Assembly: GCA_951406725.2 (NCBI GenBank) | Contig: OX597814.1 | Location: forward strand, 169,218,001 to 169,280,000 | DNA: 62,000 bases | Origin: Octopus vulgaris | Taxonomy: Eukaryota | Direction of reading: 5' to 3' | Shown here: piece by piece, positions 2,680 to 62,000 of the stretch | How positions within the stretch are numbered: the first letter of the stretch is position 1 | Layout of the letters: each line of letters opens with the position of its first letter | Notes under the pieces: model-generated | Told to the model about the DNA's origin: nothing | Databases searched by the model: none | The model's input: the letters and a program-made list of their open reading frames with translations, nothing else | Position numbers and translations under genes: made by a program

Positions 2680-3960
2680 AGCTGGAGGTGAGCCTCAGCC
2701 ATATTTCCTATGGGCTAATGACAAAGGAATAGATTCTTCTGTGTATGCAATAATGCTGATATGAGGTGGTGTGGGCATACTGTTGGCAGAGAAGTGGGTA
2801 CATAAAATGATCAAGGCATTTAGAAAATGTGATACAGTAATTCATCTTTGGCTAGTCTTGGACAACACAATAATGACATTTTTCTCTATATATGCTCCTC
2901 AACTGAGATTAGCAGATGTAGAAAAGAACCTATTTTATGAAGTCTTTTTGCAGATTACATTGATGATGAATGATAATCCCTTCTCTTCATGGTTGTTGTC
3001 TTTAATGGACATGTTGAGCAGTACTATGATAGATTTTATGGCATAGAAATGAGGAGTGAACAAAGCTGTTGGATGTATGTGATGTAAATGGCCTGATGAT
3101 CCACATCACTAACTTCAGGAAACTAGCCAACCACTTGATCATTTACCAGATTGACTACATTTTTTTTTAATGTAAAGTCCTCTGGGAAAAATGTATAACT
3201 CAAGTTAGTGACTTCAGAATTAAAGCTAAAAAGATTTTGAAAAATAAAGCAGTCTCTAAAAGGAAAATATGGATACTTAGAGATTCATTGAAGAGTCAAA
3301 AATGTAGAGAAGTACTAGTTGAAGCATAGGATGCAATGGAAGAGATCAAGACACACAAAATAGGATACGATTGGAGGTTCTTTCAGGCCAACATACTGAG
3401 AGCTATAAACTAAATCTGTGGCTAGTGTAATGTTCCAGCAAGACCAATGGGGACATAGTGGTGGAACAGTGAGAGAGTCATAAAAGCAAAGAGACAGGCT
3501 TGAACAAAAACTAGATGACATATTTAATAATGGGAGAAGCAGAAAGTAAGAGTTTTACCATCATGAGGTTCTACAGCATGAGGAACAGGTTTTCCAGATT
3601 GCAAGGCAATGTATCAGATGAAAATTTTTTTCTACTATAGGCACAAGGCCAGAAATTTTGCAGGAGGGGCTGGTCAATTACATTGACACAAGTGTTCAAC
3701 TGGTACTTATTTTATCGACTCTGAAAGGATGAAAGGCAAAGTCAACCTTGGCAGAATTTGAACTCAGAATGTAAAGACTGACAAAATGCCTCTAAGCATT
3801 CTGTTTGGCATGCTGACAACTCTGCCAGTTCACCACCTTTGCATCAGAGAAAATTGAGACATTGTGGGAGAGAAGTGTGTATGGATTGATAATGACACAC
3901 CTGCACTTAGTGGTTCTGAAAAGAGAGAGGCAAAGAAGTGCTCCTATGAAAGGTTATAAA
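2680..3960 (+). mobile_element. RTE-clade LINE endonuclease/linker remnant, interrupted by a SINE
   Basis: GVGILLAEKWV...SIYAPQ...FNGHV...KLLDVCDVNGLMI...QIDYI (APE endonuclease), later DIVGEKCV...YERL; frameshifted. Confidence 0.7.
3630..3840 (-). mobile_element. SINE family S3, partial
   Basis: Matches S3 (gaaaggatgaaaggcaaagtcaacc, gaatttgaactcagaa). Confidence 0.75.
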
Positions 3961-4029
3961 ATATGGAAAATGCATGGTAGGAAGAGTGTTTATCCAACAA
4001 TGGCCACCATCCATTCTAATAGACAGCAA

Positions 4030-4260
4030 TATTATTTCTTTATTGCCCACAAGGGGCTACACATAGAGGGGACAAACAAGGACAGACAAACGGATTAAGT
4101 TGATTATATCAACCCCAGTGCATAACTGGTACTTATCTAAATGACCCAGAAAAGAATGAAAGGTAAAGTCAACCTTGGCAAAATATGAACTCGGAATGTA
4201 GTGGCAGACAAAATACTGCTAAGCATTCTGCCCGGCGTGCTAATGTTTCTACCAGCTCAT
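4030..4260 (-). mobile_element. SINE family S3
   Basis: Reverse of tail agccccttgtgggcaataaagaaata plus S3 body and head. Confidence 0.8.
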
Positions 4261-4608
4261 GATAGATAAAACGATTATGGATATGCTTCTTTTATATGTA
4301 CTTATCTGACCATACTAGTATGGAAAAATGAGTATAAAATTAACACACTCAGTAGAAATGTATATCCATGAAGGTAAATCAAGTAACCGATGACATGCTG
4401 TTTGATGTACTTATGATATTCAAAACACCAACAATCAGCTTGATCTACATTAATCTATTCTAATAAGTGCATCTGAATTATTCCCCTTAGTTTATTTTGC
4501 TTAATACTCTCAGACCTGCCCCCCTGTGTCTAATTTTACTCTTTGTCTGGACTCCTGAGCAAAAACATAAATAGTTGCATATACTGCTAAAGAGTGATGA
4601 TTGCAGGT

Positions 4609-4770
4609 AAACTAATGGACAGAATCAAAAAAAAAAATTTAGACGAATAACAAAAATAGGCCTTTCTCTCAACAACTGTATTTGTTAGGCAAACTAATGG
4701 ACAAAATCATAAAAAAAATTCAGGAAAATAACAGTAATAGGGATTTCTCTCAACTACTGTATTTGTTTAC
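4609..4770. repeat. Two-copy ~82-bp tandem duplication
   Basis: aaactaatggac...ctctcaac..ctgtatttgtt repeated at 4609 and 4691. Confidence 0.75.
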
Positions 4771-4899
4771 CTGAATCACTACTTTCATCATCCCTTTCAC
4801 CTGTCTGATTGTCTGAATCACTCTCATTGCTAGTGTGAGTGTAAAATCTTTATCTGAAGAATAAATATCATCAATAATTTTCTCAGTTGCAAAGAGTTT

Positions 4900-5122
4900 C
4901 TTTTACTCTTTAAACTTGTTTCAGTCATTTGACTCCGGCCATGCTGGAGAACCGCCTTTAGTCAAGCAAATCGACCCCAGGACTTATTCTTTGTAAGCCT
5001 AGAACTTATTCTATTGGTCTCTTTTTGCCAAACCACTATGTTATGGGGACATAAACACACCAGCATCGGTTGTCAAGCGATGTTTGGCAGAACAAACACA
5101 GACACACAAACACACACACACA

Positions 5123-5158
<36 letters not shown>

Positions 5159-5305
5159 GCTTCTTTCAGTTTCTGTCTACCAAATCCACTCACAAGGCTT
5201 TGGTCGGCCCGAGGCTATAGTAGAAGACACTTGCCACGCAGTGGGACTGAACCTGGAACCATGTGGTTGGTAAGCAAGATACTTACCACACAGCCACTCC
5301 TGCAT
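4900..5305 (-). mobile_element. SINE family S1 (tRNA head, CORE-like cttgggcaagt region), near full length
   Basis: Reverse of ggctgtgtggtaag...ggttcagtcccactg...gcaagtgtcttctactatagcc...gaaactgaaagaagccc and tail ...gactgaaacaagt. Confidence 0.85.
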
Positions 5306-5629
5306 CAAGACTACACCTTGCTCGTTTATAAGATGAAGTGCTGGGTTCATAACATGCTGGTTTAATTGCAATTTTTTTTTTCTTTTTTGATTAAAAACAA
5401 CAGTAGCAGCAGCTATGGGATCACAATTAACAATAAATCATAAACAAATTTGGGTGCAAAGCTGCAATATGTGATCGGTTATCTAATTTTGATATTTTAT
5501 CTTCTTTATTTTTTTATGTATATTATTCATTACTGCTTTAGTGGGAATGTGATAGAGATGACATTTAAGCTATTTCTGCTATATCAAGAACATAGTATGA
5601 CAGGGTTAAAATTATTCTTGGTCTATGTT

Positions 5630-5950
5630 TAGGTCTCCCATCAGTTTGCTTGGCTTGAAGAATCCATCTTGCAATATGTTCCTGCAACATTCTAATTACA
5701 TGTTTGTAGTACAAGAGGTATGACTTCTCATTGCAGAGAAATAGCAGCTTGACCTGGAGAACCTCTCTGTCTCCTAGCTATGCTCCCTGTTGAGTAACAT
5801 TACTCCAGAGATCATTCTGAACCCCATTTGAGCTGTTTGTATATGTGAGTATACTTTTTGGTCATTACACAGCATTCACAACCTTGGTGAGGAAAGGCTT
5901 GAAAACTGAACTGAAGATACCAAGTTTGGCCTTTTTTTACCAACCTCCTT
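5630..5950 (-). mobile_element. Old RTE-like LINE C-terminal fragment
   Basis: Minus strand QTAQMGFRMISGVMLLNREH...YYKHVIRM...DGRPK resembles the RTE C-terminus; degenerate. Confidence 0.4.
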
Positions 5951-6180
5951 TTTTCAGAGAATCAATCACTGGAACTAGTGCACTACTTTGCTGGCATCTG
6001 CAATTAAAAAATCAAAACTAGTATAGTAGATTTGATCTAAGGTGTGGTTTTAGGGATACCTGGCCGTTATTTCTGATAAATATCCTTCAATTTATATCTT
6101 ACTGCTTCAGAAAAGGAAGAATGCATTGGTAAATCTAATCTCGTCCTATGGATATGCAAAAAAAAAAGAAAAAAAGGGAT

Positions 6181-7411: not shown

Positions 7412-8046
7412 GGCATTATAAAACCTAGAGGGTATGAAAAAAAAAAAAAAAAAGGAAATTTTTAATGGTCTTTTCTGACATGGCTAAATATTGATTGGTA
7501 ACATAGGCATAGGATCATAAATTCTACAAAAGGTAACTCTGAATAAGATTCTTAAATTATTCCTAGTATTTGACTGGTGCTATGTTTTAATGACACTGGA
7601 AGGACAACTAGTACATCCAGCCCCAGTGAGATTTCTGCTGCAATGTAAAAAGGACACATCTTAATAAAATACCCAAAGGTATGGCTGTGCGATTTTGCAA
7701 CTACACGTTTTGAGGTTCAGTTCCGGCATTATAAAACCTAGAGGGTATGAAAAAAAAAAAAAAAAGAAAAAGAAAATTTTTAATGGTCTTTTCTGACATG
7801 GCTAAATATTGATTGGTAACATAGGCATAGGATCATAAATTCTACAAAAGGTAACTCTGAATAAGATTCTTAAATTATTCCTAGTATTTGACTGGTGTTA
7901 TATTTTAATGACACCGGAAGGACAACTAGTACATCCAGCCCCAGTGAGATTTCTGCTGCAATGTAAAAGGGACATATCTTAATAAGATACCCAAAGGTAT
8001 GGCTGTGCGATTTTGCAACCACACGTTTTGAGGTTCAGCTCCATGG
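7412..8046. repeat. 313-bp near-perfect tandem duplication
   Basis: ggcattataaaacctagagg at 7412 and 7725; units nearly identical. Confidence 0.95.
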
Positions 8047-8589: not shown

Positions 8590-8967
8590 CATCCAACCCA
8601 TGCCAGCATGAAAAACAGATGCTTACTGATGATGATGATGATGATGATGATGATTATGATGATAAGGGTTGGTGACAGGAAGAGCATTTGGCCATAAAAT
8701 TCTGCCTCAGATAAATCCTCATCTAACCCATGTAAGCATGGAAAACAGATGCTAAATGATGATGATGATGGTGATGATGATGATGATGATGACGACGACG
8801 ACGACGATGACGATGATGATGATGATGAGGAAGATGATGATGATGATGGTGATGATGATGATGATGATGATGATGATGACGACGATGACGACGACGACGA
8901 CTATGATGATGATGATGAGGAAGATGATGATGATGATAGTGATGATGACGACGACGACGACGACGAC

Positions 8968-9012
<45 letters not shown>

Positions 9013-9161
9013 ATGGGTCAGTGGCAGGAAGAGTATTTGGCCATAAAATTCCGCCAGCATGGAAAACAGATGCTAAATGATGATGACGATGGTGATGATG
9101 ATGATGGTGATGGTGATGATGATGATGATGATGATGATGAGGAAGATGATGATGATGATGG

Positions 9162-9193
<32 letters not shown>

Positions 9194-9300
9194 GTAACGA
9201 TGATGTTAAGAGTTGGTTTACAGGAAGAGTAATTGGCCATAAAATTCTGCCTCAAATAAGTCTTCATACAACCCATGCCAGCATGGAAAAGTGGATATTA
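8590..9300 (+). repeat. Serial S2-type tails with long (GAT/GAC)n arrays
   Basis: Repeated ggaagag..ttggccataaaatt....gcatggaaaa units separated by (GAT)n tracts sharing gaggaagat interruptions. Confidence 0.85.
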
Positions 9301-9809: not shown

Positions 9810-10195
9810 GCACAGAAGTGGCTGTGTGGTAAGAAGCTTGCTTCCCAACCACATGGTTCCAGGTTCAGTCCTATGGTGTGGCACCTTGGGCAAGTGTTTC
9901 CTAATATAACTTTGGGTTGACCAAGCCCTTGTGAGTGGACTTAGTAGACAGAAACTGAAAGATGCCCATCAATGTATATATGTATCTGTGTGTGTGTGTT
10001 TGTCCCTCCGCTATCGTTTGACAATTGATGTTAGTGTGTTTACGTCTCCCTGTATCTTAGCGGGTCAGCAAAAGAACCTGATAGACTATAAAGAATAAGT
10101 CCTGGGCTCGATTTGTTCGACTAAAGGAGTTGCTCCAGCATGGCAGCAGTCAAATGACTGAAACAAGTAAAAGAATAAAATAAAAAAGATAAATA
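9810..10195 (+). mobile_element. SINE S1
   Basis: S1 head and tail motifs. Confidence 0.85.
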
Positions 10196-10929: not shown

Positions 10930-11665
10930 TTACTTTCTCTTTCTCTTCTCCTCACTTTCTCTTACCTGCCTGCTTGTTTGACAGTCTCTTTCTCTCACTC
11001 ATTCCCTCTTTCTCCCCTCTCCTTCTCACTTGTCAGCTTATTTGACACTTTCTCTTACTAGTTCTCTGTCTGCGACTCTTTTTCTCTCTCTCTCTCTCTC
11101 AGTTACTTTGTGGGTCTCTTAATCACTTCCTCCCCCGCTGTCTCTTGTTTTTCTCACTTTCCTTTGCTCACACCACAGTTTTTACTTCTTTCTTTTCCCT
11201 CCTCCCACTACACCTTTCAATCTCTCTCTTCTCTCCCCTTCTTTCTTCCTTTCTCTTTCTCCTCTCTCCCTTCCTTCCCCCCTCTCTCTCCTCTTTCCCT
11301 TGCCCTCTCTCTCCCCTTCTCTCCTTTTCTCTCTTCCTCTCTCCCTTCCTTCCCCCTCTCTCTCCTCTTTCCCTTGCCCTCCCTCTCCTTTTCTCTCTCG
11401 TTCGGTCTCCCCATATCTCTCTATCCTTCTCTCCTTTTCTCTCTTCCTTTTTCCCTTCCTTCCCCCTCTCTCTCCGCTTTCCCTTGCCCTCCCTCTCCTC
11501 TTCTCTCTTTCCTTCTGTCTTCATATCTCTCTCTATCATTCTCTCCTTTTCTCTCTTCCTTCCCCCTCTCTCTCCTCTTTCCCTTTCTCTCTCCTTCTGT
11601 CTCCCCGTCTCTCTGTCCTTCTCTCCTTTTCTCTCTTCCTCTCTCTTCTCCTTCCCCCTCTCTCC
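10930..11665. repeat. Polypyrimidine tract with degenerate tandem units
   Basis: Recurrent cttctctccttttctctcttcc / ttccttccccctctctctcctctttcccttgccctc blocks. Confidence 0.9.
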
Positions 11666-12714: not shown

Positions 12715-12735
12715 GAGTGAGAGAGAGAGATATAG

Positions 12736-12774
<39 letters not shown>

Positions 12775-12840
12775 CCGACAGATAGAAGAGATAGATAGAT
12801 AGATAGATAGACCGACAGATAGATAGATAGAGAGATAGAG

Positions 12841-12883
<43 letters not shown>

Positions 12884-12924
12884 CCGACAGATAGATAGAT
12901 AGATAGATAGACCGACAGATAGAG

Positions 12925-13020
<96 letters not shown>

Positions 13021-13025
13021 TGATT
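12715..13025. repeat. (GATA)n microsatellite with recurring accgac interruptions
   Basis: Direct reading. Confidence 0.95.
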
Positions 13026-18794: not shown

Positions 18795-19030
18795 TATTTC
18801 TTATTTCTTTACTGCCCACAAGGGGCTACACACAGAGGAAACAAACAAGGACAAACAAACGGATTAAGTCGATTATATTGACCCCAATGCGTAACTGGTA
18901 CTTATTTAATCGACCCCGAAAGGATGAAAGGCAAAGTCAACCTCGGCGAAATTTGAACTCAGAACGTAGCGGCAGATGAAATACCGCTAAGCATTTCGCC
19001 CAGCGTGCTAATGTTTCTGCCAGCTTCCAT
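18795..19030 (-). mobile_element. SINE S3, near full length
   Basis: S3 head, body and tail. Confidence 0.85.
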
Positions 19031-26149: not shown

Positions 26150-26985
26150 ATTCTTTGATTGTAGGTTCATTTGTTTATAGATTAAATTTGTTGATTGGTG
26201 GTTCATTTGTTTATAGATTAAATCTTTTGATTGGTGGTCCATTTGTTTATAGATTAAATTTTTTGATTGGTGGTCCATTTGTTTATAGATTAAATTTTTT
26301 TTTATTGGTGGCCCATTTGTTTATAGATTAAATTTTTTGATTGGTGGTCCATTTGTTTATAGATTAAATTTGTTGATTGGTGGTTCATTTGTTTATAGAT
26401 TAAATTTTTTGATTGGTGGTCCATTTGTTTATAGATTAAATTTTCTGATTGGTGGTCCATTTGTTTATAGATTAAATTTTTTGATTGGTGGTCCATTTGT
26501 TTATAGATTAAATTTGTTGATTGGTGGTTCATTTGTTTATAGATTAAATTTTTTGATTGGTGGCCCATTTGTTTATAGATTAAATTTTTTGATTGGTGGT
26601 CCATTTGTTTATAGATTAAATTTGTTGATTGGTGGTTCATTTGTTTATAGATAAATTTTTTTGGATTGGTGGCCCATTTGTTTATAGATTAAATTTTTTG
26701 ATTGGTGGTCCATTTGTTTATAGATTAAATTTTTTGATTGGTGGTCCATTTGTTTATAGATAAATTTTTTTGGATTGGTGGCCCATTTGTTTATAGATTA
26801 AATTTTCTGATTGGTGGTCCATTTGTTTATAGATTAAATTTGTTGATTGGTGGTCTATTTGTTTATAGATTAAATTTTCTGATTGGTGGTCCATTTGTTT
26901 ATAGATTAAATTTTTTGATTGGTGGTCCATTTGTTTATAGATTAAATTTTTTGATTGGGGGTCCATTTGTTTATAGATTAAATTA
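26150..26985. repeat. 36-bp minisatellite, about 23 copies
   Basis: Unit gattggtggtccatttgtttatagattaaatttttt with few variants. Confidence 0.95.
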
Positions 26986-30713: not shown

Positions 30714-30744
<31 letters not shown>

Positions 30745-30745
30745 C
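30630..30745 (+). mobile_element. Short tRNA-head SINE with (TAA)n tail
   Basis: tggcatagtggttaagagc (A box)...gagctcgattcc (B-box-like), then taa repeats. Confidence 0.65.
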
Positions 30746-30975
30746 TATTTCTTTACTACCCACAAGGGGCTAAACATAGAGAGAACAAACAAGGACAGAC
30801 AAATGGATTAAGTCGATTATATCGACCCCAGTGCATAACTGGTACTTAATTTATCGACCCCGAAAGGATGAAAGGCAAAGTTAACCTCGGCGGAATTTGA
30901 ACTCAGAATGTAACGGCAGACGAAATAGGCTACACATTTCACCTGGCGTGCTAACGGTTCTGCCAGCTTGCTACC
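30745..30975 (-). mobile_element. SINE S3
   Basis: S3 head, body and tail. Confidence 0.85.
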
Positions 30976-46884: not shown

Positions 46885-47373
46885 TATTTCTTTACTACCC
46901 ACAAGGGGCTAAACACAGAAGGGATAAACAAAGACAGACAAATGGATTAAGTTGATTATATCGACCCCAGTGTATAGGGTGGCGAGCTGGCAGAAACGTT
47001 AGCGCACTGGGTGAAATGCTTAGCGGTATTTCGTCTGTCGTTACCTTCTGAGTTCAAATTCCGCCGAGGTCAACTTTGCCTTTCATCCTTTCGGGGTCGA
47101 TAAATAAAGTACCAGTTTCGCACTGGGGTCGATGTAATTGACTTAATCCCTTTGTCTGTCCTTGTTTGTCCCCTCTATGTTTAGCCCCTTGTGGGTAGTA
47201 AAGAAATATATATCGACCCCAGTGTGTAACTGGTACTTATTTGATCGACCCCGAAAGTATGGAAGGCAAACCTCAACCTCGGCGGAACTTGAACTCAGAA
47301 TGTAGCGGCAGACGAAATACTGCTGAATATTTCGCCCGGCATGCTAACGTTTCTGCTAGCTCACCGCCCTTAT
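46885..47373 (-). mobile_element. SINE S3 (outer), 20-bp TSD
   Basis: ggagaatagtaagttttata at 46865-46884 and 47374-47393. Confidence 0.9.
46974..47208 (+). mobile_element. SINE S3 (inner, full length), 17-bp TSD
   Basis: tatatcgaccccagtgt at 46957-46973 and 47209-47225; A box tggcgagctgg, B box gagttcaaattcc. Confidence 0.9.
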
Positions 47374-54418: not shown

Positions 54419-54754
54419 TCATGCGTGTGTGTATGTGCGTTCATGTGTGTGTGTGTATGTAAATACACACACACGTACAGACAGACAGATACACACACAC
54501 TGATATATATATATATATATATATATGTAATCTTTTATCACAGCATATTCCATAATGGATTCACAGCATCATGCATAATGAACAGCATAATTAATCACCA
54601 CTGCTGCTGTTCTTGCTTATGTTCAATATATTGATCTTCCCTAGTGGTTTGCTATTATTCCTGGTGAACAAACTTACGAACTATCTATCTACCTTGTGTG
54701 CATGTCTCTCTGTTTGTTGGTTTACCTGCCTCTCTGTATGTCTGTCCATTCATC

Positions 54755-54755
54755 C

Positions 54756-54845
<90 letters not shown>

Positions 54846-54857
54846 TTATCTATCTAC

Positions 54858-54914
<57 letters not shown>

Positions 54915-54916
54915 CA

Positions 54917-54947
<31 letters not shown>

Positions 54948-54948
54948 C
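54755..54948. repeat. (TCTA)n microsatellite
   Basis: Direct reading. Confidence 0.95.
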
Positions 54949-55098
54949 TGGACAGACAGACGCAAGTCAAATGGGCTCCAAGTAAGTTGGTCATTTTGTA
55001 CGTTCAAAAGTGTTTATTGTTAAATATTTTGTGTTTAAAAGTTGTGCAACAACATCCACTGCAAACCTTGACTAATATCTACACAAAATTTCGCAAAA

Positions 55099-57128
55099 AT
55101 GGCTACTGGTCACCACGAGGCTGAGGCGCAACTGAAGCGTGACGCCAAAACAAAAAAGCAAGATTTCCTGTCACCATGCGCTGAACTTGACTGTGTAAAC
55201 ACTACTTACTCCAACACCACCACCATCAGCATCGACAACAGCAACAAATACAAAACAAAGGTCGTAAGACCAAGCACCGTCACCGCCACCAGTGATTCCA
55301 CCATCAACACCAACACCACCACCATGGCAGCATCTGCTACTACAACTGCTATCTCTGCTAACGACACCACTACCAGCAACAATAACAATACCAACATCAC
55401 CATCACCGCCACCAAAGACCGTGCCGTCAATGCCTCCCTTGCTACTAATACCTATTTCTTTATTACCCACAAGGGGCTAAACATAGAGGGGACAAGCAAG
55501 GACAGGCATAGGTATTAAGTCGATTACATCGACCCCAGTGCATAACTGGTACTTAATTTATCGACCCCGAAAGGATGAAAGGCAAAGTCAACCTCGGCGG
55601 AATTTGAACTCACAACGTAACGACAGACCTAATACCACCGCCGTCACCAAGAACGACAATAACAACAACAACAATTCCCTTCAGCCACTGTTCACTCCAT
55701 CACCAACAAGTGAAGGTGAGAAAAAAATAACAGCGACAATCAAACGAGGTGCCGAAATTTGCGCTAATGCAGGACCAAATTACGCAGACAATTTTCCACC
55801 CCTTGCCAGTTGCATAATCAGCAACCACAAACCTAATATACCCACAACCCACACCCCTGCCACCAACACCAACACCACCGGCAGTAACAACAATAACAAA
55901 ACAACAACAAACTTCGCCGAGGCGATAAAAGAAAAAATAACAAGAGTACCGTTTACTGCACAGCAAATAAAAGACTGCAGAGCCCTAATCACCAAAGAAA
56001 ACGGCAAAATACAATTACACATACCACAACACATACTGAATGAGGAAAAAAAGAGAACAATTGTATATAAAATAACAAACAACACAACTAAAAGTCCAGA
56101 AAAAGCAAGCACGGACAAAATAGAAAAGTGCCTACGCCCCATCTGGGGACACAAGGAGTATGTGACTTGGTCGAACAAGTTCGCCCACGTACAGGTGGTT
56201 TTTTCAGAATGAAGAGTTGGCAAAGCAATTCCCAACGCTAACTCTTCATTCAGATGAGCTAACAATGACACCCAGTTACCTTGGCCAGAAGGTGACAAAG
56301 GTCATTATCAATAATGTCCCGCAAATAACAACCACACTATGGATAACATCCGCCATAACATCCGAAATGGAGGACATTAACATCCTGGATATCACTGTTT
56401 CGAAACACAAGGACTGGGTGGGAAAGAGAATGGAGATTCTCTTCCACATAAGCCAAGACGACATTAACAAAATTCCCACCCACGTACATCTTGCGAATGA
56501 CCGCAAGTTGTATGTAGTAGTCGAGGGCAGAAGGCCACGCTGCTATACATGTGGCAGTGAGGCACACCTCAAAAAGGAGTGCAAATCTGCCGCGAAACAA
56601 CAACAACAACAGCCACAGGAAAAACCACAAAAGCCAGCATTATTGTCCACACCACAATATGGACGGCTAATCAAGAAGCTGTATGCAGAAATGCATGAAA
56701 AACAACAAAGAACGGACCAACCCAACCAAACAACACCACCACCTGCGCCAAGAACAGAATCATCACCACTAACAACAACTAAACCAATTCCAACACCGAG
56801 AACAACAACGAAGAAGACAAGCACCAAGGATGTAGGAGAGAAATCACCACACCAAACCCCCCAGCAACACACCCCACACCACAACAATATCTACAACCGC
56901 ACAAACAGACCCAGATGCTTTACCCTTACCCCCGGCTAATTCGTCAGGCTTTTCATCTAACGATGAAAGTTCGACAGAATGGCAAATAGCCACCGGGGGT
57001 AAAAGAAAAGATTAAAAAAAAAACAAACAAGAAAACGCAACCAAAGCAGGGAGATACCTGAACCCTGAAAGCTCCATACACAACCAAACAGGAACGAGGA
57101 AGCCAAAACTTTCGACACAAGTAAGTAA
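55099..57128 (+). pseudogene. ORF1 (gag-like) of LINE copy 1, disrupted
   Basis: MATGHH start; SINE insertion; +1 frameshift in the T run at 56199-56204; RCYTCGSEAHLKKEC zinc knuckle. Confidence 0.8.
55453..55628 (-). mobile_element. 5'-truncated SINE S3 in ORF1, 8-bp TSD
   Basis: ctaatacc at 55445-55452 and 55629-55636. Confidence 0.9.
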
Positions 57129-57173
57129 CTCTCTGTACTTTCCTTTCTGTGTTTTAAAGCACACAATAGAATC

Positions 57174-58216
57174 ATGGTCAAGATTGGTTGTGTGAATGCG
57201 CGTGGCTTGGGGTCTCCTTGGAAACAAGGATACCTCCTAAATGACATGAAGTCACACGATTTGGGAATCAGCCATAAGTGAGACCAGACTCCACGAGCCA
57301 CGGGCCCTAAAGTCCATGTTTGGCGGACAGTTTAACATTTATTTTGCTCCCTGTCTGCCGAGGATGGGCGGTAGTGGCACCGCGGTACTTTTTCACTAGA
57401 GCCTGGATCTCGAAGTCAAGAAGATATTCGTAGACCCGGAGGGTAGACTGGTCGTTCTGGATGTCAACGGTAGCAGTGGGTGTGCTTTTCGACTCGTATC
57501 AGTCTACGCACCGCCTTTAACAGGTCGGCCGGATTTCTTTCAACGTCTAGAAGTATTCCTGGGAACGTCTCGTCCTTTACTTTTAGTGGGGGATTGGAAT
57601 GCTACCTTGGACACGCATCTAGACTATGTGGTGAGAGACAAAAACAGAAGGGGATGCAAATGCTTCAGAGACCTGCTCAGACAATTCCAACTGTCTGACA
57701 GGTACCGACTCGACCACCCAAATGCACCAACGTGGACATGGAGTAACCGCAGTGGGTCGTCGAGATCGTATCTAGATAGGATACTGTGTAGGACAGTAGA
57801 CAAGGATAACTTAGGATGTCCACAATTCCACACAGTCAGCTACACAGATCACAAATTCGTGACATGTACGCTAGACTTAGATAAGGCACATAGACAGGGT
57901 CCTGGTTACTGGAAACTGAACGTATCATTCCCGTCCAGACAAGATTTCAGAGACAGAATCAACACGTTTGTAAAAAGGGCTTTAACGGGAGCCATTGTCA
58001 ACAACAAATGGTGGTTCGCCCTCAAGAGAGCAGTAAAAGCGGAAGCAATTAGATATAGCAAGGCGCTAGCCGTAGATAGAAATAGAGTATCACTTGAAGA
58101 GGAAAGTGAGAGTAGAGAGGTAAGTTTTGTCTAGTGAATGTTTTAAAAAAAGATGGGTGAATGTAGCAAGGATGGCGCGTATGAATGACGAAGCCACCTT
58201 GACTATGATTCTATGA
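57174..58216 (+). pseudogene. ORF2 of LINE copy 1: APE endonuclease fused to extreme C-terminus
   Basis: MVKIGCVNARGLGSPWKQ...GDWNATLD...SYLDRILC...TDHKFV...PGYWKLN; after 58090 HLKRKVRVER*VLSSECFKKRW...MIL*. Confidence 0.85.
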
Positions 58217-58587
58217 ACCGTAAAAATTAATACAGAGAGTTGCTTATTTGCAAAAAAAAAAATAAAAGAAAGTAATATAACATGTGACTTCATTGACCGA
58301 GGTTACCGTGGTCTTTTCCGTAGGCTTTTCTTTCCACGGGTAAACCTCACCTGTCCTCCCCTTTGCACTTCATATTGACATTTCTGTGATAACGATCCCT
58401 ATTGATCAATTCCCCCCCTTTTTTTTTAAATTTTATTTTATCTCCCCCTTTTTTTGTCCTCTTTCTTTCCATTTACGATCTCTTTTGATCGAAAATCAAA
58501 CCCCCTTCTTTTACTCCCAAAAGAAAAGCTCTACCTTGTAATTTTGTTCTGTCTGTGTGCAGCCCTGTGTGGCTAATAAAGAAACAT

Positions 58588-58614
58588 ATCTATCTATCTA
58601 CATATGTATGTATG

Positions 58615-58665
<51 letters not shown>

Positions 58666-58678
58666 ATCTACCTATCTC
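58588..58678. repeat. (TCTA)n microsatellite between the two LINEs
   Basis: Direct reading. Confidence 0.95.
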
Positions 58679-58897
58679 GACATGGACGGACGCTAGTAAA
58701 ATCGGCTCCACGTAAGTTGGCCACTTTTACATGTTTAAAACTCCTTGTTGTCAAATATTTTGTTTTAATCGTTGTGCAAGTTAATTCACTAAAAAAACTG
58801 AGAATTATTCACGTAGAATTCCGCCCCTGTATGGGCGAAATTACCAAAAACTTTCAAAACTTTCGTGGGTTCCTTTTAGCCATTTTTCATTTTGAAA

Positions 58898-60807
58898 ATG
58901 GCAACTAGAAACCACGTGGCTAGCCCGCCAGCCATGCGGAACGGTAGCGAAACACTATTGCTACCACTAGCTGCTAAACCTCGCAGCTTGAACACCGCTG
59001 TCACCACCACCAACCAACAACAACAACAAAACTAACGTCGCAAGACCATTCACCATCGCCGCGACCAAAGACATTAACTTAGATTTCCCCCCACTCCCTA
59101 CACTACTTGTCGATGATAAAAGGATGGAGAAAGGGATTTCAAAGACGAATACAGACGAAAACATGAATGCCAGCACCACCACCACACCACCAACAACAAC
59201 AACAACGAAATCAACACAAAGCCGCCTACCAAAGACAACACCGCCAACACCAACACCACTACCATGACTTCAACTGCTACAACTAACCCTTCTGCTGCTA
59301 ACACCGCTAAAATTAAAACGAATTTCGCGGATGCGACAAAATAAAAACGAACAATCGTAAAATTCACCACACAGGAAATAAACCTCACAAAAGCACTCTT
59401 CACCAAAGAAGGAGATAAATTGCATCTTCACATTCCACAGCACATCGTGGAAAACACACAAAAAATACAATAATCTACAAAGTAATAAACAAGAAAACAA
59501 GACGACCAGAAAATGCACCGCAGGAAAAAATTGAAAAATGCCTTCGTCCTGCATGGGACTCCAAGGAGTATATCAGTTGGGGAAATAAATTTGGTACAGT
59601 CCAAGTACGTTTCCTCAACGAAAATTTAGCAAAACGATTTTCCACATTGGAGCTGCATTCAGACGACTTGGTAATGATACCAATCTATTTAAACCAGAGA
59701 GTGACGAAAGTCCAAATAAAAAATGTACCCCCTGAAGTCGAAACACAATGGTTAGTCTCTGCCATCTGCTTTGAAATGGCAGAGACAAACATCCTTGAAA
59801 TCGCTGTTCTAGGACAGAAAGACTATGTGGGAAAATCAATCCAATTCCTTCTTCAATTGGATGAAACAGCAAGAGAAAAAATACCCACACTATAGAACTG
59901 CCAGGAGGCTACAAACTTTATGTAGTGGTAGAGGGCAGGCGACCACGTTGCTATTTGTGTGGAAGCGAAACACACTTGAAAAAGACGTGCCCAACCACTG
60001 CACACCAAGAGCAACAACAACAACCACTACCACAACCAAAACACTCCGGAAAAAAGCTCTACTACCCACACCACCATCAACACAGAAGACGACAAGAGAA
60101 GCACACCAAGCTAATCCGTCAACAACCAAAAATTACTCAACACCTGAGAAAATACCAACACCACCAACAACAGCAAGAACCAAAGGAACAGAAAAACAAA
60201 GAAAATACACAAAAACTGATTCCCCATCCCTTATACCGCACTCACCACACACAAACACTCAACAAACAACAGCACAACCACTTACACAGACATACATAGA
60301 AGCCTACAACATACCCCTACCCACTACTGATTCCTCAGAAAATTCGTCGGAAGACGAAACCAGTGAGGAATGGCAAATAGCTAGAAAAAGAAGGAAAATA
60401 AAGATCAGAAACACAACCAAACCAAATGCAAACACTAACAAAGCAGGGGGAAATACATCTCCCGAAGACATTTCAAAACCCAACACAAACAACAGCCACA
60501 CCAACACCACAAAAATATATACAGCAAACATGCTCACAGCTATAGACACCAAAAACACAAATTTGATGGAATACATCCAAAAAAAACAAACATAACAGAA
60601 GATGACATAAAAGCAAACAATCACCCATACACAACACCACCAGACCACATCAAAATATTACACATCTCCAAAAGTCTGCACCACACACTCAAAGGCATTT
60701 TCCCCAGTGCGGTTGGTAAATGCCAAAAATATCTCACAAAGAAACTGTACTGGGATCTCCTCGAGGACAAACCAAAGGAGGAGAAAGCAAAACCTTTCGA
60801 GCAGTAA
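58898..60807 (+). pseudogene. ORF1 of LINE copy 2, frameshifted
   Basis: MATRNH start; homologous blocks (LHIPQHI, VEGRRPRCYLCGSETHLKKTC); several stops and frameshifts. Confidence 0.8.
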
Positions 60808-60851
60808 GTAACCCTCTGTTCCTTTCACTTGTATTCTAATTCATTAGGATT

Positions 60852-62000
60852 ATGATCAAGATTGGTTGTGTAAATGCGCGTGGCTTGGGGTCCCCTTGGA
60901 AACAAGGGTACCTCTTAAATGACATAAAGTCACATAAGTTAGAAATCATAGCCATAAGTGAGACCAGACTCCACAATCCACGGGCCCTAAAGACCATGTT
61001 TGGCGGACAGTTCAACATTTATTTTCCCCCTGTCTGCCGAGAATGGGCGGTAGTGGCACCGCGGTACTTTTTCGCAAGAGTCTGGATCTCAAAGTAAAGA
61101 CAATATTCATAGACAATATCCAGGACGACCAGTCTACCCTCCGGAGGGTAGACTGGATGTCGACAGCAGCAATGGGTGCATTTTCGACTCGTATCAGTCT
61201 ATGCACCGCCCTTAACAGGTCAGGCAGATTTCTTTCAACGTCTAGAAATATTCTTGGGAACATCTCGTCCTTTACTCTTAGTGGGGGATTGGAATGCTAC
61301 CTTGGACACGCATGTAGACTACGTGGGTAGAGATAGGAATAGACGGGGATGCAAATGCCTCAGAGACCTGCTCAGACGCTTTCAACTGTCTGACAGGTTC
61401 CGACTAGACCACCTGAATGCGCCAACGTGGACATGGAGCAACCGCATTGGGTCGTCGAGATTGTATCTAGATAGGATACTGTGTAGGACAGTAGATAGAG
61501 ATAGCATAGGATGTCCACAATTCCACATAGTCAGCTGCACGGATCACAAACTTGTGACATGTACGCTAGACTTAGATAAGACACTTAGGCAGGGTTCCGG
61601 ATACTGGAAACTAAACGCGTCTTTCCCATCGAGACAGGTTTTCAGAGACCGGATTAGCACACTAATAAAGAGGGCTTTGAGGGGAGCCATTGTCAACAAC
61701 AAATGGTGGTTTGCCCTCAAGAGAGCAGTAAACGCAGAAGCAATTAGGTACAGCAAAGCACTAGCCATAGATAGAAATAGAGTAGAGGGTGAGCTAGTTA
61801 AGAAGCTAGAAGAGGCAATTAGAAGCGGCATCACATTCGACGTTTTGGTGGCGAGGTTTGCCCTCGACCAACACTTCAACGCCAAACACGAAGGGTGTGC
61901 TGTCAGGGCTAGGATGCGTGCTCTAAGGAACGAAGGTGTTGGAGCCGCGAGAGAGGCCCGGGTGGCAGAGGCGCAACAGGGCAACAAAGCCACCATTCGG
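60852..62000 (+). pseudogene. ORF2 (APE endonuclease and linker) of LINE copy 2, partial
   Basis: MIKIGCVNARGLG...AISETRL...GDWNATLD...YLDRILC...TDHKLV...GYWKLN...RARMR; frameshifts in the 5' part, open from about 61280 to the window end. Confidence 0.85.

What the first reader, a model, noticed from the sequence alone, without database searches (positions are those of the whole stretch)
54755..58720. L1/Tx1-clade LINE family apparently targeting (TCTA)n microsatellites
Seen: the 5' end of copy 1 (54950), the 3' end of copy 1 (58587) and the 5' end of copy 2 (58679) all abut (TCTA)n in the same orientation, and both 5' junctions read ctatctc followed shortly by ggac(a/g)gacgc. The two copies are clearly diverged, especially in ORF1, so this is not a simple tandem duplication. 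Established: several Tx1-group families are sequence-specific, some for microsatellites. I do not know of one described for TCTA/TAGA, but I cannot check this.
Basis: partly seen in the sequence, partly recalled or inferred. Interest (0 to 1): 0.8.

Follow-up and report, generated by a model that had tools for sequence, protein, structure and literature searches.

The report
LINE family that inserts into (TCTA)n microsatellites
Two dead copies of an abundant, recently active L1/Tx1-type jumping gene sit in one (TCTA)n microsatellite, and across the genome this family inserts almost only into (TCTA)n repeats in one orientation, a target not reported for such elements in the literature I could search.

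Summary
Copy 1 (54950-58587) and copy 2 (58679 to beyond the window) are diverged, broken copies of a non-LTR retrotransposon. It has ORF1 with a CCHC knuckle and ORF2 with an APE endonuclease, a reverse transcriptase and zf-RVT. Both copies lie in one (TCTA)n array.

Genome-wide, at least 3 TCTA units adjoin:
- 25/30 and 17/20 full-length 5' ends of two lineages;
- 22/30 3' ends;
- 12/19 5' junctions of 5'-truncated copies;
- 14/14 5' ends and 18/19 3' ends of copies chosen by ORF2 alone.

Random sequence gives 0.2-0.6%. The opposite orientation was never seen. The 5'-truncated copies rule out a repeat carried only by the element.

Many copies have intact ORFs, and the young copies compared are 98-99% identical, so the family was active recently. 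Its ORF2 groups with elements that I found inserted at fixed sites in U2 and U5 snRNA genes and in a dispersed repeat. It groups apart from human L1, which fits the Tx1 clade, though no named Tx1 reference was available.

Microsatellite-specific Tx1 elements are known for (TC)n, (TTC)n and (TTCC)n. I found none for TCTA/GATA. This is a new member of a known kind. Endonuclease specificity is inferred, not tested.

The parts
54752..54947 (+). (TCTA)n array of about 50 units with a few variant units. It is the upstream part of the target microsatellite and abuts the 5' end of copy 1 through the extra bases CT (54948-54949).
   Evidence: TRF; sequence. Upstream of 54750 is unique sequence, not another element's 3' end.
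54950..58587 (+). Copy 1: a 3638-bp dead, internally deleted copy of the 'GGACAGACAGACGC-head' lineage. A full-length copy is 6.1-6.2 kb.
   Evidence: BLAST against full-length genomic copies. Window 54950-55094 matches reference 1-145 and 58116-58587 matches reference 5681-6138. There are deletions of reference 146-211, 2042-2316 and 3322-5680. Every reading frame has multiple stops.
54950..55098 (+). 5' UTR of copy 1. It contains a splice-donor-like motif, ctccaaGTAAGT, at 54976-54987.
   Evidence: The first 145 nt are 94-100% identical to 39 other genomic 5' ends.
55099..57020 (+). ORF1 remnant of copy 1. The ATG is at 55099 and the CCHC zinc knuckle C-x2-C-x4-H-x4-C is encoded at 56541-56582. 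The frame is broken by frameshifts, a 275-bp deletion and a SINE insertion.
   Evidence: The intact homologue in L064 is 697 aa with a zf-CCHC hit (E 0.004, below the Pfam cut-off) and no Transposase_22 hit.
55453..55628 (-). Secondary insertion of a 176-bp SINE into copy 1's ORF1. It is flanked by the 8-bp target duplication CTAATACC (55445-55452 and 55629-55636).
   Evidence: The same SINE occurs at 30736-30927, 47025-47208, 18802-18985 and 4033-4216. The minus strand is inferred only from the T-rich run at the left end.
57174..58089 (+). N-terminal part of ORF2 of copy 1, the APE-type endonuclease region. It is frameshifted and ends at the large internal deletion, which removes the whole reverse transcriptase.
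   Evidence: The intact homologue matches Exo_endo_phos at 5e-15. The catalytic N, E, Y, D-x-N, D and D-H residues align with human L1 EN.
58116..58587 (+). 3' UTR of copy 1. The last 62 nt (58526-58587, AAGCTCTACC...GGCTAATAAAGAAACAT, including AATAAA) are nearly invariant across all lineages. There is no poly(A).
   Evidence: Alignment of six copies from three lineages. The 488-nt 3' query gave 1966 first-look candidates. The fold z-score is only -0.57.
58588..58678 (+). Remainder of the (TCTA)n array between the 3' end of copy 1 and the 5' end of copy 2.
   Evidence: TRF 58587-58677; sequence.
58679..62000 (+). Copy 2: a member of a second lineage with the 'GACATGGACGGACGC' head. ORF1 ATG is at 58898 and ORF2 ATG at 60852. 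Both ORFs are broken and the copy is internally deleted. It runs on to about window position 63630, where (ATCT)n follows again.
   Evidence: using locus L063. In 17 of 20 other genomic copies of this head, at least 3 TCTA units precede the 5' end.

Best explanation
The region holds two independent, now dead insertions of a target-specific non-LTR retrotransposon family of the L1 group, most likely the Tx1 clade. Both went into one pre-existing (TCTA)n microsatellite.

An intact element is about 6.2 kb. It has a 5' UTR, ORF1 (697 aa, with an RRM-like region and a CCHC knuckle), ORF2 (1145-1152 aa, APE endonuclease, then RT, then zf-RVT) and a 3' UTR. The 3' UTR ends in a conserved 62-nt module carrying AATAAA, followed directly by ATCT units and no poly(A).

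Shown here:
- Copies on all chromosomes are flanked on both sides by (TCTA)n.
- The repeat always reads TCTA on the element's sense strand.
- The same holds at the 5' junction of 5'-truncated copies.
- Tandem head-to-tail pairs like the one in the window are common.

Inferred by analogy with the Tx1L, R1 and TRAS/SART endonucleases:
- The APE endonuclease nicks the (TAGA)n bottom strand.
- The transcript reads a few units into the downstream repeat, and its AUCU 3' end anneals to the nicked strand, so reverse transcription starts in register just after ...AAACAU.
- The top strand is cut after ...ATCT, and the cDNA is joined there, often with 1-3 extra bases (CT or TC).

Each insertion recreates a target array on both sides, which explains the tandem pairs.
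For: Anatomy and domains: (Exo_endo_phos 5e-15, RVT_1 4e-32, zf-RVT 2e-7, CCHC knuckle). Catalytic endonuclease residues are conserved. The best solved relatives are human L1 ORF2p at 4e-55.

Targeting, scored as at least 3 TCTA units within 60 nt of the junction:
- 25/30 full-length 5' ends, 22/30 3' ends, 12/19 5'-truncated junctions and 17/20 copy-2-lineage 5' ends.
- Among 20 copies chosen only by ORF2 similarity, 14/14 identifiable 5' ends and 18/19 3' ends.
- Five further whole copies chosen by ORF2 were flanked on both sides, two of them 5'-truncated.
- The opposite orientation occurred 0 times in every set.
- Background is 0.2-0.6%, giving binomial p from 1e-22 to 4e-51.

Arrays exist without the element: an unoccupied (TCTA)76 array lies at 12720-13024.

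Recent activity: dozens of copies have open ORF2 frames of 1152 aa, and the young copies compared are 98-99% identical.

A clade of site-specific elements: in the tree, octopod elements are sister (support 100) to relatives at about 41% identity. Those relatives insert at one fixed site of a dispersed repeat with a target duplication of about 17 bp. Both groups lie in a support-100 clade with a U2-snRNA-gene inserter and a U5-snRNA-gene inserter, apart from human L1.

The 3'-terminal 62 nt are nearly invariant between lineages whose ORF1 is only 65% identical.
Against: About 10-35% of junctions, depending on the set, have fewer than 3 perfect units or none. Examples are L005, L013 and L014 (no repeat at the 5' junction) and L056. 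Specificity is therefore not absolute, or these copies were rearranged later.

No empty allele was available, so the pre-insertion state and the target duplication or deletion length are unknown.

The nick site cannot be read from junctions inside a periodic repeat.

Endonuclease specificity is untested. Tail annealing alone could give much of the pattern.

The tree contains no named Tx1 sequence, a single L1 and no outgroup, so it was rooted on L1 by choice.

The one Argonauta copy I retrieved is degraded and uninformative.

Repbase could not be searched, so an existing deposit with this target cannot be excluded.
Confidence: 0.87

Rival explanations
1. The family is targeted to (TCTA)n, but the specificity comes mainly from base pairing. 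The transcript's (AUCU)n 3' tail anneals to single-stranded or nicked (TAGA)n DNA, and the endonuclease itself is relaxed and L1-like. This is a rival for the mechanism, not for the targeting.
For: Every 3' end carries at least one ATCT unit even outside arrays. Examples are L006 (ATCT then unique sequence), L003 with three units and L008. The RNA therefore ends in repeat units.

No sequence-specific contacts can be deduced from the endonuclease alignment.

Known L1-type elements use tail annealing (established knowledge).
Against: The nearest relatives insert at unique, non-repetitive fixed sites in U2, U5 and a dispersed repeat. In the Tx1 and R1 clades that behaviour is attributed to endonuclease specificity (PMC4494074, citing Takahashi and Fujiwara 2002).

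The 5' junction also falls at a constant phase...ATCT or ...ATCTCT. Tail annealing does not explain that.
Confidence: 0.25
2. The repeat belongs to the element. Either it is a simple-repeat 3' tail, as in CR1 or I-factor elements, or it is carried at both ends by upstream initiation and read-through transcription. Integration would then be essentially random.
For: The 3' end always continues with ATCT units and has no poly(A). Some copies have only 1-4 units next to unique DNA, for example L003, L006, L034, L045 and L049.
Against: In 12 of 19 5'-truncated copies, (TCTA)n sits directly at the truncation point, where no element-borne repeat can exist. Six of these have at least 10 units. L065 and L066 show the same.

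Arrays flanking young copies are long, reaching more than 30 units in the flanks read. They contain old variant units (GTCT, CCAT, ACCT).

An identical array exists unoccupied at 12720-13024.
Confidence: 0.03
3. The pattern is passive. Either the elements accumulate or survive preferentially in microsatellite-rich, low-recombination DNA, or the window pair arose by local tandem duplication.
For: The genome is very rich in microsatellites. Waldo-A and Waldo-B in Drosophila have been explained this way (PMC3812793).
Against: Junctions are exact to the base, in one motif and one orientation. The opposite orientation was seen 0 times in 132 scored junctions, while other microsatellites abound nearby.

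The background within 600-1500 nt of the same copies is only 0.6%.

The two window copies differ by 16-35% and belong to lineages that each have many dispersed copies (first-look candidates: 402 and 584).
Confidence: 0.02

Closest known systems
Kibi and Koshi (Tx1 clade, teleost fish) and the crocodilian Tx1 families that insert into (TTCC)n/(TTTC)n
   Same: All are APE-type, two-ORF LINEs of the L1/Tx1 group. Copies are flanked on both sides by one microsatellite motif (PMC4494074, PMC3812793). By Kojima's criterion, a given sequence in more than 20% of flanks, this family is target-specific with 63-100%.
   Different: The target motif is a mixed purine/pyrimidine tetranucleotide, (TCTA)n, which is the same repeat as (GATA)n. 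It is not a homopyrimidine repeat such as (TC)n, (TTC)n or (TTCC)n. The host is an octopod mollusc, not a vertebrate. In my tree the nearest relatives are not microsatellite inserters but elements specific for a dispersed repeat. No named Kibi or Koshi sequence was available for comparison.
Keno (U2 snRNA gene-specific Tx1 element) and U5-specific Tx1 families
   Same: ORF2 architecture and length (1120-1163 aa) match, and they fall in the same support-100 clade. I confirmed a fish relative (P0113) interrupting U2 after ...CTGTTCTTATCA, and another relative (P0168) interrupting U5 after ...CCTTTTACTAAA.
   Different: ORF2 identity is only 28-29%. ORF1 is not detectably similar except for the knuckle. 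Their targets are single sites in genes rather than a repeat array. That P0113 is 'Keno' is my inference from its target, not from a named sequence.
Tx1L of Xenopus laevis (type element of the clade)
   Same: It is a site-specific L1-group LINE that inserts into another repeated sequence, and its endonuclease is reported to determine the target (cited in PMC4494074). The 41%-identity relatives found here behave in the same way.
   Different: The target differs: the Tx1D transposon rather than a microsatellite.
Waldo (ACAY)n and Mino (AC)n (R1 clade), Dong (TAA)n (R4) and Togen (TG)n (NeSL-related)
   Same: All are microsatellite-specific non-LTR retrotransposons (PMC3812793, PMC4640811).
   Different: They belong to different clades. 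Dong and Togen use a restriction-like endonuclease, not an APE endonuclease. The motifs also differ.
Human L1
   Same: It is the best solved-structure match over the endonuclease and RT (E 4e-55). The catalytic endonuclease residues are the same. Both show frequent 5' truncation.
   Different: L1 has a poly(A) tail, a Transposase_22 ORF1 and only a loose TTTT/AA target. This family has none of these features.

Membership tests
Non-LTR retrotransposon, L1 group | ORF2 with an N-terminal APE-type endonuclease that has intact catalytic residues | tested here: met
   Exo_endo_phos at 5e-15. The N, E, Y, D-x-N, D and D-H residues align with human L1 EN.
Non-LTR retrotransposon, L1 group | LINE-type reverse transcriptase followed by a C-terminal zinc-binding domain, with L1 as the closest relative | tested here: met
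   RVT_1 at 4e-32 and zf-RVT at 2e-7. Human L1 ORF2p scores E 4e-55, against 3e-21 for R2.
Non-LTR retrotransposon, L1 group | No terminal repeats, a constant 3' end and variable 5' truncation | tested here: met
   19 of 30 3'-end loci are truncated at different points within 2 kb of the 3' end.
Tx1 clade | RT-domain phylogeny places the element with named Tx1 references (Tx1L, Keno, Kibi, Koshi) and not with L1 proper | tested here: inconclusive
   No named Tx1 sequence could be obtained. In an ORF2 tree the family lies in a support-100 clade with elements that I showed to be U2- and U5-snRNA-gene inserters. Human L1 and five longer proteins fall outside it. The tree has a single L1, no independent outgroup and quick-search support only.
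Tx1 clade | Type I ORF1 (RRM plus CCHC knuckle) rather than Transposase_22 | tested here: inconclusive
   A canonical C-x2-C-x4-H-x4-C motif is present, but zf-CCHC scores 17.6 bits against a cut-off of 20.8. There is no Transposase_22 hit. About 230 aa before the knuckle are homologous to ORF1 of the 41% relatives (E 4e-13). An RRM fold was not demonstrated.
Tx1 clade | Target-sequence preference, defined as one sequence type in more than 20% of flanks (criterion of PMC4494074) | tested here: met
   63-100% of junctions, depending on the set.
Microsatellite-specific LINE (Kibi/Koshi kind) | The same microsatellite motif on both flanks, in a fixed orientation | tested here: met
   The opposite orientation occurred 0 times.
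Microsatellite-specific LINE (Kibi/Koshi kind) | The repeat is target DNA and not element-borne, so 5'-truncated copies also abut it | tested here: met
   12 of 19 5'-truncated copies, plus L065 and L066.
Microsatellite-specific LINE (Kibi/Koshi kind) | Identity with a described family, meaning a target of (TC)n, (TTC)n or (TTCC)n | tested here: not met
   The target is (TCTA)n. It is therefore not Kibi or Koshi themselves but a further member of the kind.
Microsatellite-specific LINE (Kibi/Koshi kind) | The endonuclease cleaves the target repeat specifically | not testable with these tools
   This needs a biochemical nicking assay.

The most novel reading that the evidence does not exclude
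This is an undescribed, currently active Tx1-type lineage whose endonuclease itself reads the asymmetric (TCTA)n/(TAGA)n duplex in one orientation. Its ancestors would have switched to this target from a dispersed-repeat or snRNA-gene target.

Every copy carries ATCT units at its 3' end and recreates arrays on both sides. The element would then also seed and spread (TCTA)n arrays, so that LINE and microsatellite amplify each other in octopod genomes.

A conserved splice-donor-like motif in the 5' UTR and an acceptor-like tract just before ORF2 might additionally give a spliced ORF2 mRNA.
Probability: 0.3. Interest if true: 0.65.

Novelty: new member of a known kind. Interest (0 to 1): 0.5.

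Why it matters
It adds a new target class, the common tetranucleotide repeat (TCTA)n, which is the same repeat as (GATA)n, and a new phylum to the short list of microsatellite-specific LINEs. The family has many intact, nearly identical copies, so its targeting can be tested experimentally.

It sits next to relatives that hit a dispersed repeat and U2 and U5 genes. That gives a natural series for asking how an APE endonuclease changes its target.

For octopus genomics, it explains part of the 'recently active L1-Tx1' fraction reported for a 2.8-Gb Octopus vulgaris assembly (PMC13282606), where no targeting is mentioned.

It predicts insertion polymorphisms and null alleles at tetranucleotide microsatellites with this motif, should such loci be used as population markers.

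Site-specific LINEs are also of interest as tools for gene insertion.

Tried and rejected
I worked with five whole copies and with 140-300-nt junction windows that the same tool did allow.

2. Cross-species test in Argonauta hians. The only copy reachable (L089) is a degraded RT fragment with no adjacent array, so it is uninformative.

3. Naming the clade through database names. The homologues are almost all unnamed metagenome or assembly proteins. The supplement of the Tx1 paper is not held.

4. An outgroup RT from the window. None is present.

5. A 3'-terminal RNA structure. The fold is not better than shuffles (z -0.57), so I make no structural claim.

6. Target duplications in imperfect arrays such as L030 and L064 could not be resolved.

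7. Literature searches for TCTA, TAGA, GATA or AGAT together with non-LTR retrotransposons found nothing relevant.

8. Copy 1's large deletion is not shared by the other 29 3'-end loci. It is therefore not an amplified non-autonomous derivative.
Full report
OBSERVATION

The window (G000:C1:169218001-169280000) comes from a 2.8-Gb genome in 227 contigs that is rich in microsatellites. TRF finds (ATCT)50 at 54752-54947 and (TATC)23 at 58587-58677. The first G of GGACAGACAGACGC is at 54950. The last T of GGCTAATAAAGAAACAT is at 58587. The first G of GACATGGACGGACGC is at 58679.

A self-BLAST shows that the two elements are related but diverged. They are 84% identical over the endonuclease region, 65% over ORF1 and 80% over the first 95 nt. 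Only the quoted motif is approximate.

WHAT THE TWO COPIES ARE

I compared both copies with full-length genomic copies: L061 (6138 bp) and L064 (6229 bp).

Copy 1 is 3638 bp long and dead:
- It lacks reference positions 146-211 and 2042-2316.
- It lacks positions 3322-5680, which is the whole reverse transcriptase. The junction is at window 58089/58116.
- It carries a 176-bp SINE at 55453-55628, flanked by the duplication CTAATACC.
- It has many stops.
- Its large deletion is not shared by the 29 other 3'-end loci.

Copy 2 starts at 58679 and runs to about window position 63630, where (ATCT)n follows again (L063). It is 74% identical to the copy-1 lineage, is internally deleted, and is also broken.

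An intact copy (L064) has the following parts:
- a 5' UTR of 220 nt;
- ORF1 of 697 aa, with a canonical C-x2-C-x4-H-x4-C knuckle and no Transposase_22 domain;
- ORF2 of 1145 aa, with Exo_endo_phos (5e-15), RVT_1 (4e-32) and zf-RVT (2e-7);
- a 3' UTR of about 430 nt.

The endonuclease's catalytic residues align with those of human L1 EN. The best solved relatives are human L1 ORF2p (E 4e-55), far ahead of R2.

The last 62 nt, which include AATAAA, are nearly invariant among lineages whose other parts are strongly diverged. They show no unusual folding energy. No copy has a poly(A) tail.

IS THE (TCTA)n ASSOCIATION REAL ACROSS THE GENOME?

The 3' end found 1966 first-look candidates. The two kinds of 5' head found 402 and 584. 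I oriented the best loci and scored junctions for at least 3 perfect TCTA units within 60 nt:
- 25/30 full-length 5' ends of the copy-1 lineage;
- 22/30 3' ends;
- 17/20 5' ends of the copy-2 lineage;
- 12/19 5' junctions of 5'-truncated copies, six of them with at least 10 units.

To avoid any bias from searching with terminal sequence, I also chose copies by ORF2 protein similarity alone. Five whole copies were all flanked on both sides, and two of them are 5'-truncated. For 20 further copies I read only the predicted junction windows. All 14 identifiable 5' ends and 18 of 19 3' ends adjoin the repeat.

The reverse orientation, (TAGA)n on the sense strand, was never seen. Controls give 0.2% for random 63-nt segments of the window. 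They give 0.6% for sequence 600-1500 nt upstream of the same copies. Binomial p-values run from 1e-22 to 4e-51.

Six of 30 5' flanks contain the 3' end of another copy within 130 nt. Head-to-tail pairs like the one in the window are therefore common.

An unoccupied (TCTA)76 array with unique flanks lies at 12720-13024 on the minus strand. The arrays therefore exist independently of the element.

WHAT THIS EXCLUDES

A repeat that is only an element-encoded tail, or one carried at both ends by read-through, cannot explain arrays at the break point of 5'-truncated copies.

Passive accumulation cannot explain base-exact junctions in one motif and one orientation.

Tandem duplication is excluded by the divergence between the copies and by the dispersed copies of each lineage.

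What remains open is how the target is read.

MECHANISM

This part is inferred. In the Tx1 and R1 clades the target is attributed mainly to the endonuclease (PMC4494074, citing Takahashi and Fujiwara 2002).

Three features are relevant here:
- All 3' junctions read ...AAAC(A/T)T then ATCT..., and even copies outside arrays keep one to three ATCT units (L003, L006, L008). The template RNA therefore ends in AUCU units. The probable cause is that AATAAA lies 7 nt before the element's end, so transcripts run into the downstream array.
- The 5' junctions end in ...ATCT or ...ATCTCT before the first element base.
- There is no poly(A).

I propose the following sequence of events. The endonuclease nicks the (TAGA)n strand. 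The AUCU end anneals to the nicked strand. Reverse transcription starts in register. The top strand is cut after ATCT.

The main rival for this step is a relaxed endonuclease with specificity supplied by annealing alone. I give that 0.25.

RELATIVES AND CLADE

The closest named homologue is a hypothetical protein of Argonauta hians at 65% identity. The host is therefore probably an octopod.

The next relatives are about 41% identical and come from an unnamed assembly, ERZ21867824. They insert at one fixed site of a dispersed repeat with a duplication of about 17 bp (TTAAGTCAACCCCAGCC), and they often form tandems.

Relatives at 28-29% identity include two site-specific elements:
- One sits in a fish snRNA gene cluster and interrupts U2 after ...CTGTTCTTATCA. 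It fits the published description of Keno.
- One interrupts U5 after ...CCTTTTACTAAA within a tandem U5 unit.

In an ORF2 tree the octopod pair is sister to the 41% group (support 100). All of these lie in a support-100 clade of 32 sequences. Human L1 and five longer proteins fall outside it.

This fits the Tx1 clade, 'many of which show target sequence preference' (PMC4494074). It is not a formal placement, because the tree has no named Tx1 reference, a single L1 and no independent outgroup.

ORF1 is homologous to ORF1 of the 41% relatives over about 230 aa up to the knuckle (E 4e-13). Apart from the knuckle, it is not detectably similar to the fish element's ORF1.

ACTIVITY AND EVOLUTION

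Dozens of copies have open ORF2 frames of 1152 aa, and the young copies compared are 98-99% identical. The family was therefore active recently.

Near-identical ORF2s are joined to three different 5' heads: GGACAGACAGACGC, CGACATGGACGGACGC and GACTGACGGATGTGATG. All three heads are preceded by (TCTA)n. The 5' UTR has thus been exchanged while the target was kept.

COMPARISON WITH WHAT IS KNOWN

Microsatellite-specific LINEs are already described (PMC3812793, PMC4494074, PMC4640811):
- Waldo targets (ACAY)n.
- Mino targets (AC)n.
- Kibi targets (TC)n.
- Koshi targets (TTC)n.
- Dong targets (TAA)n.
- Crocodilian Tx1 families target (TTCC)n and (TTTC)n.
- Togen targets (TG)n.

My full-text searches found no LINE specific for TCTA, TAGA or GATA and no report of targeting by octopus Tx1 elements. 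Repbase could not be consulted.

VERDICT

The family is a new member, with a new motif and a new host phylum, of a known kind. Interest is moderate at 0.5. It would be higher if the endonuclease proves to read the tetranucleotide repeat itself.

Noticed in passing
window 54976-54987, 57118-57160 and 57174; 58706-58717 and 60801-60852; L064 893-960 and 3180-3270; L099 about 1265-1280: Splice-site-like motifs are conserved across diverged lineages. A donor-like (A/C)(A/G)GTAAGT lies 25-35 nt from the 5' end, and the 41% relatives of another organism have it too. The ORF1 stop codon lies inside caaGTAAGTaac. A polypyrimidine tract plus AG sits just before the ORF2 ATG. This could give a spliced ORF2 mRNA, or the motifs could be U1-binding sites.
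   Followed up: partly
window 12720-13024 (minus strand reads TCTA): An unoccupied (TCTA)76 array with unique flanks. It is interrupted about every 60 nt by CTGTCGGT, which gives it a higher-order period. No element end lies nearby (one search finds the 3' motif only at 58571).
   Followed up: partly
window 55453-55628; also 30736-30927, 47025-47208 (-), 18802-18985, 4033-4216 and 3673-3790: A SINE of about 180 bp occurs at least six times in the window at 83-92% identity. One copy is inserted into copy 1's ORF1 with the 8-bp duplication CTAATACC. That insertion therefore postdates copy 1.
   Followed up: partly
L104-L122: Near-identical ORF2 sequences with 1152-aa open frames are joined to three unrelated-looking 5' heads. 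All three heads are preceded by (TCTA)n. This indicates 5' UTR (promoter) exchange within the family.
   Followed up: partly
L098-L103 (ENA ERZ21867824), junctions near 1235-1250 and 7665-7690: Relatives with 41% ORF2 identity, in an unnamed organism, insert at one fixed site of a dispersed repeat. The duplication is about 17 bp (TTAAGTCAACCCCAGCC), and they often form direct tandems. Their 3' end (...GGCCTCGTGCC...AAAGAAATAAAG) resembles the octopod 3' module.
   Followed up: partly
L092 1950-2031 (U2), 1692-1808 (U5), 446-551 (U6); L096 2149 and 10060-10179 (U5): Two relatives at 28-29% identity are snRNA-gene inserters. One interrupts U2 at about nucleotide 50 in a fish U6-U5-U2 cluster, and its ORF1 carries RBD_ZCCHC3 domains. 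The other interrupts U5 at about nucleotide 49 in a 7.9-kb tandem unit.
   Followed up: partly
L037 and L043, just upstream of the 5' end: An inverted internal fragment of the same element abuts the full-length 5' end, with only ATCT between them. This head-to-head structure is reminiscent of twin priming or template switching.
   Followed up: no
window 26150-26984; 7412-8042; 8756-9205; 11221-11665: Other repeats are present: a 36-bp satellite of 23 copies at 92% identity, a 318-bp tandem duplication, an (ATG)148 tract and a long CT-rich low-complexity block.
   Followed up: no
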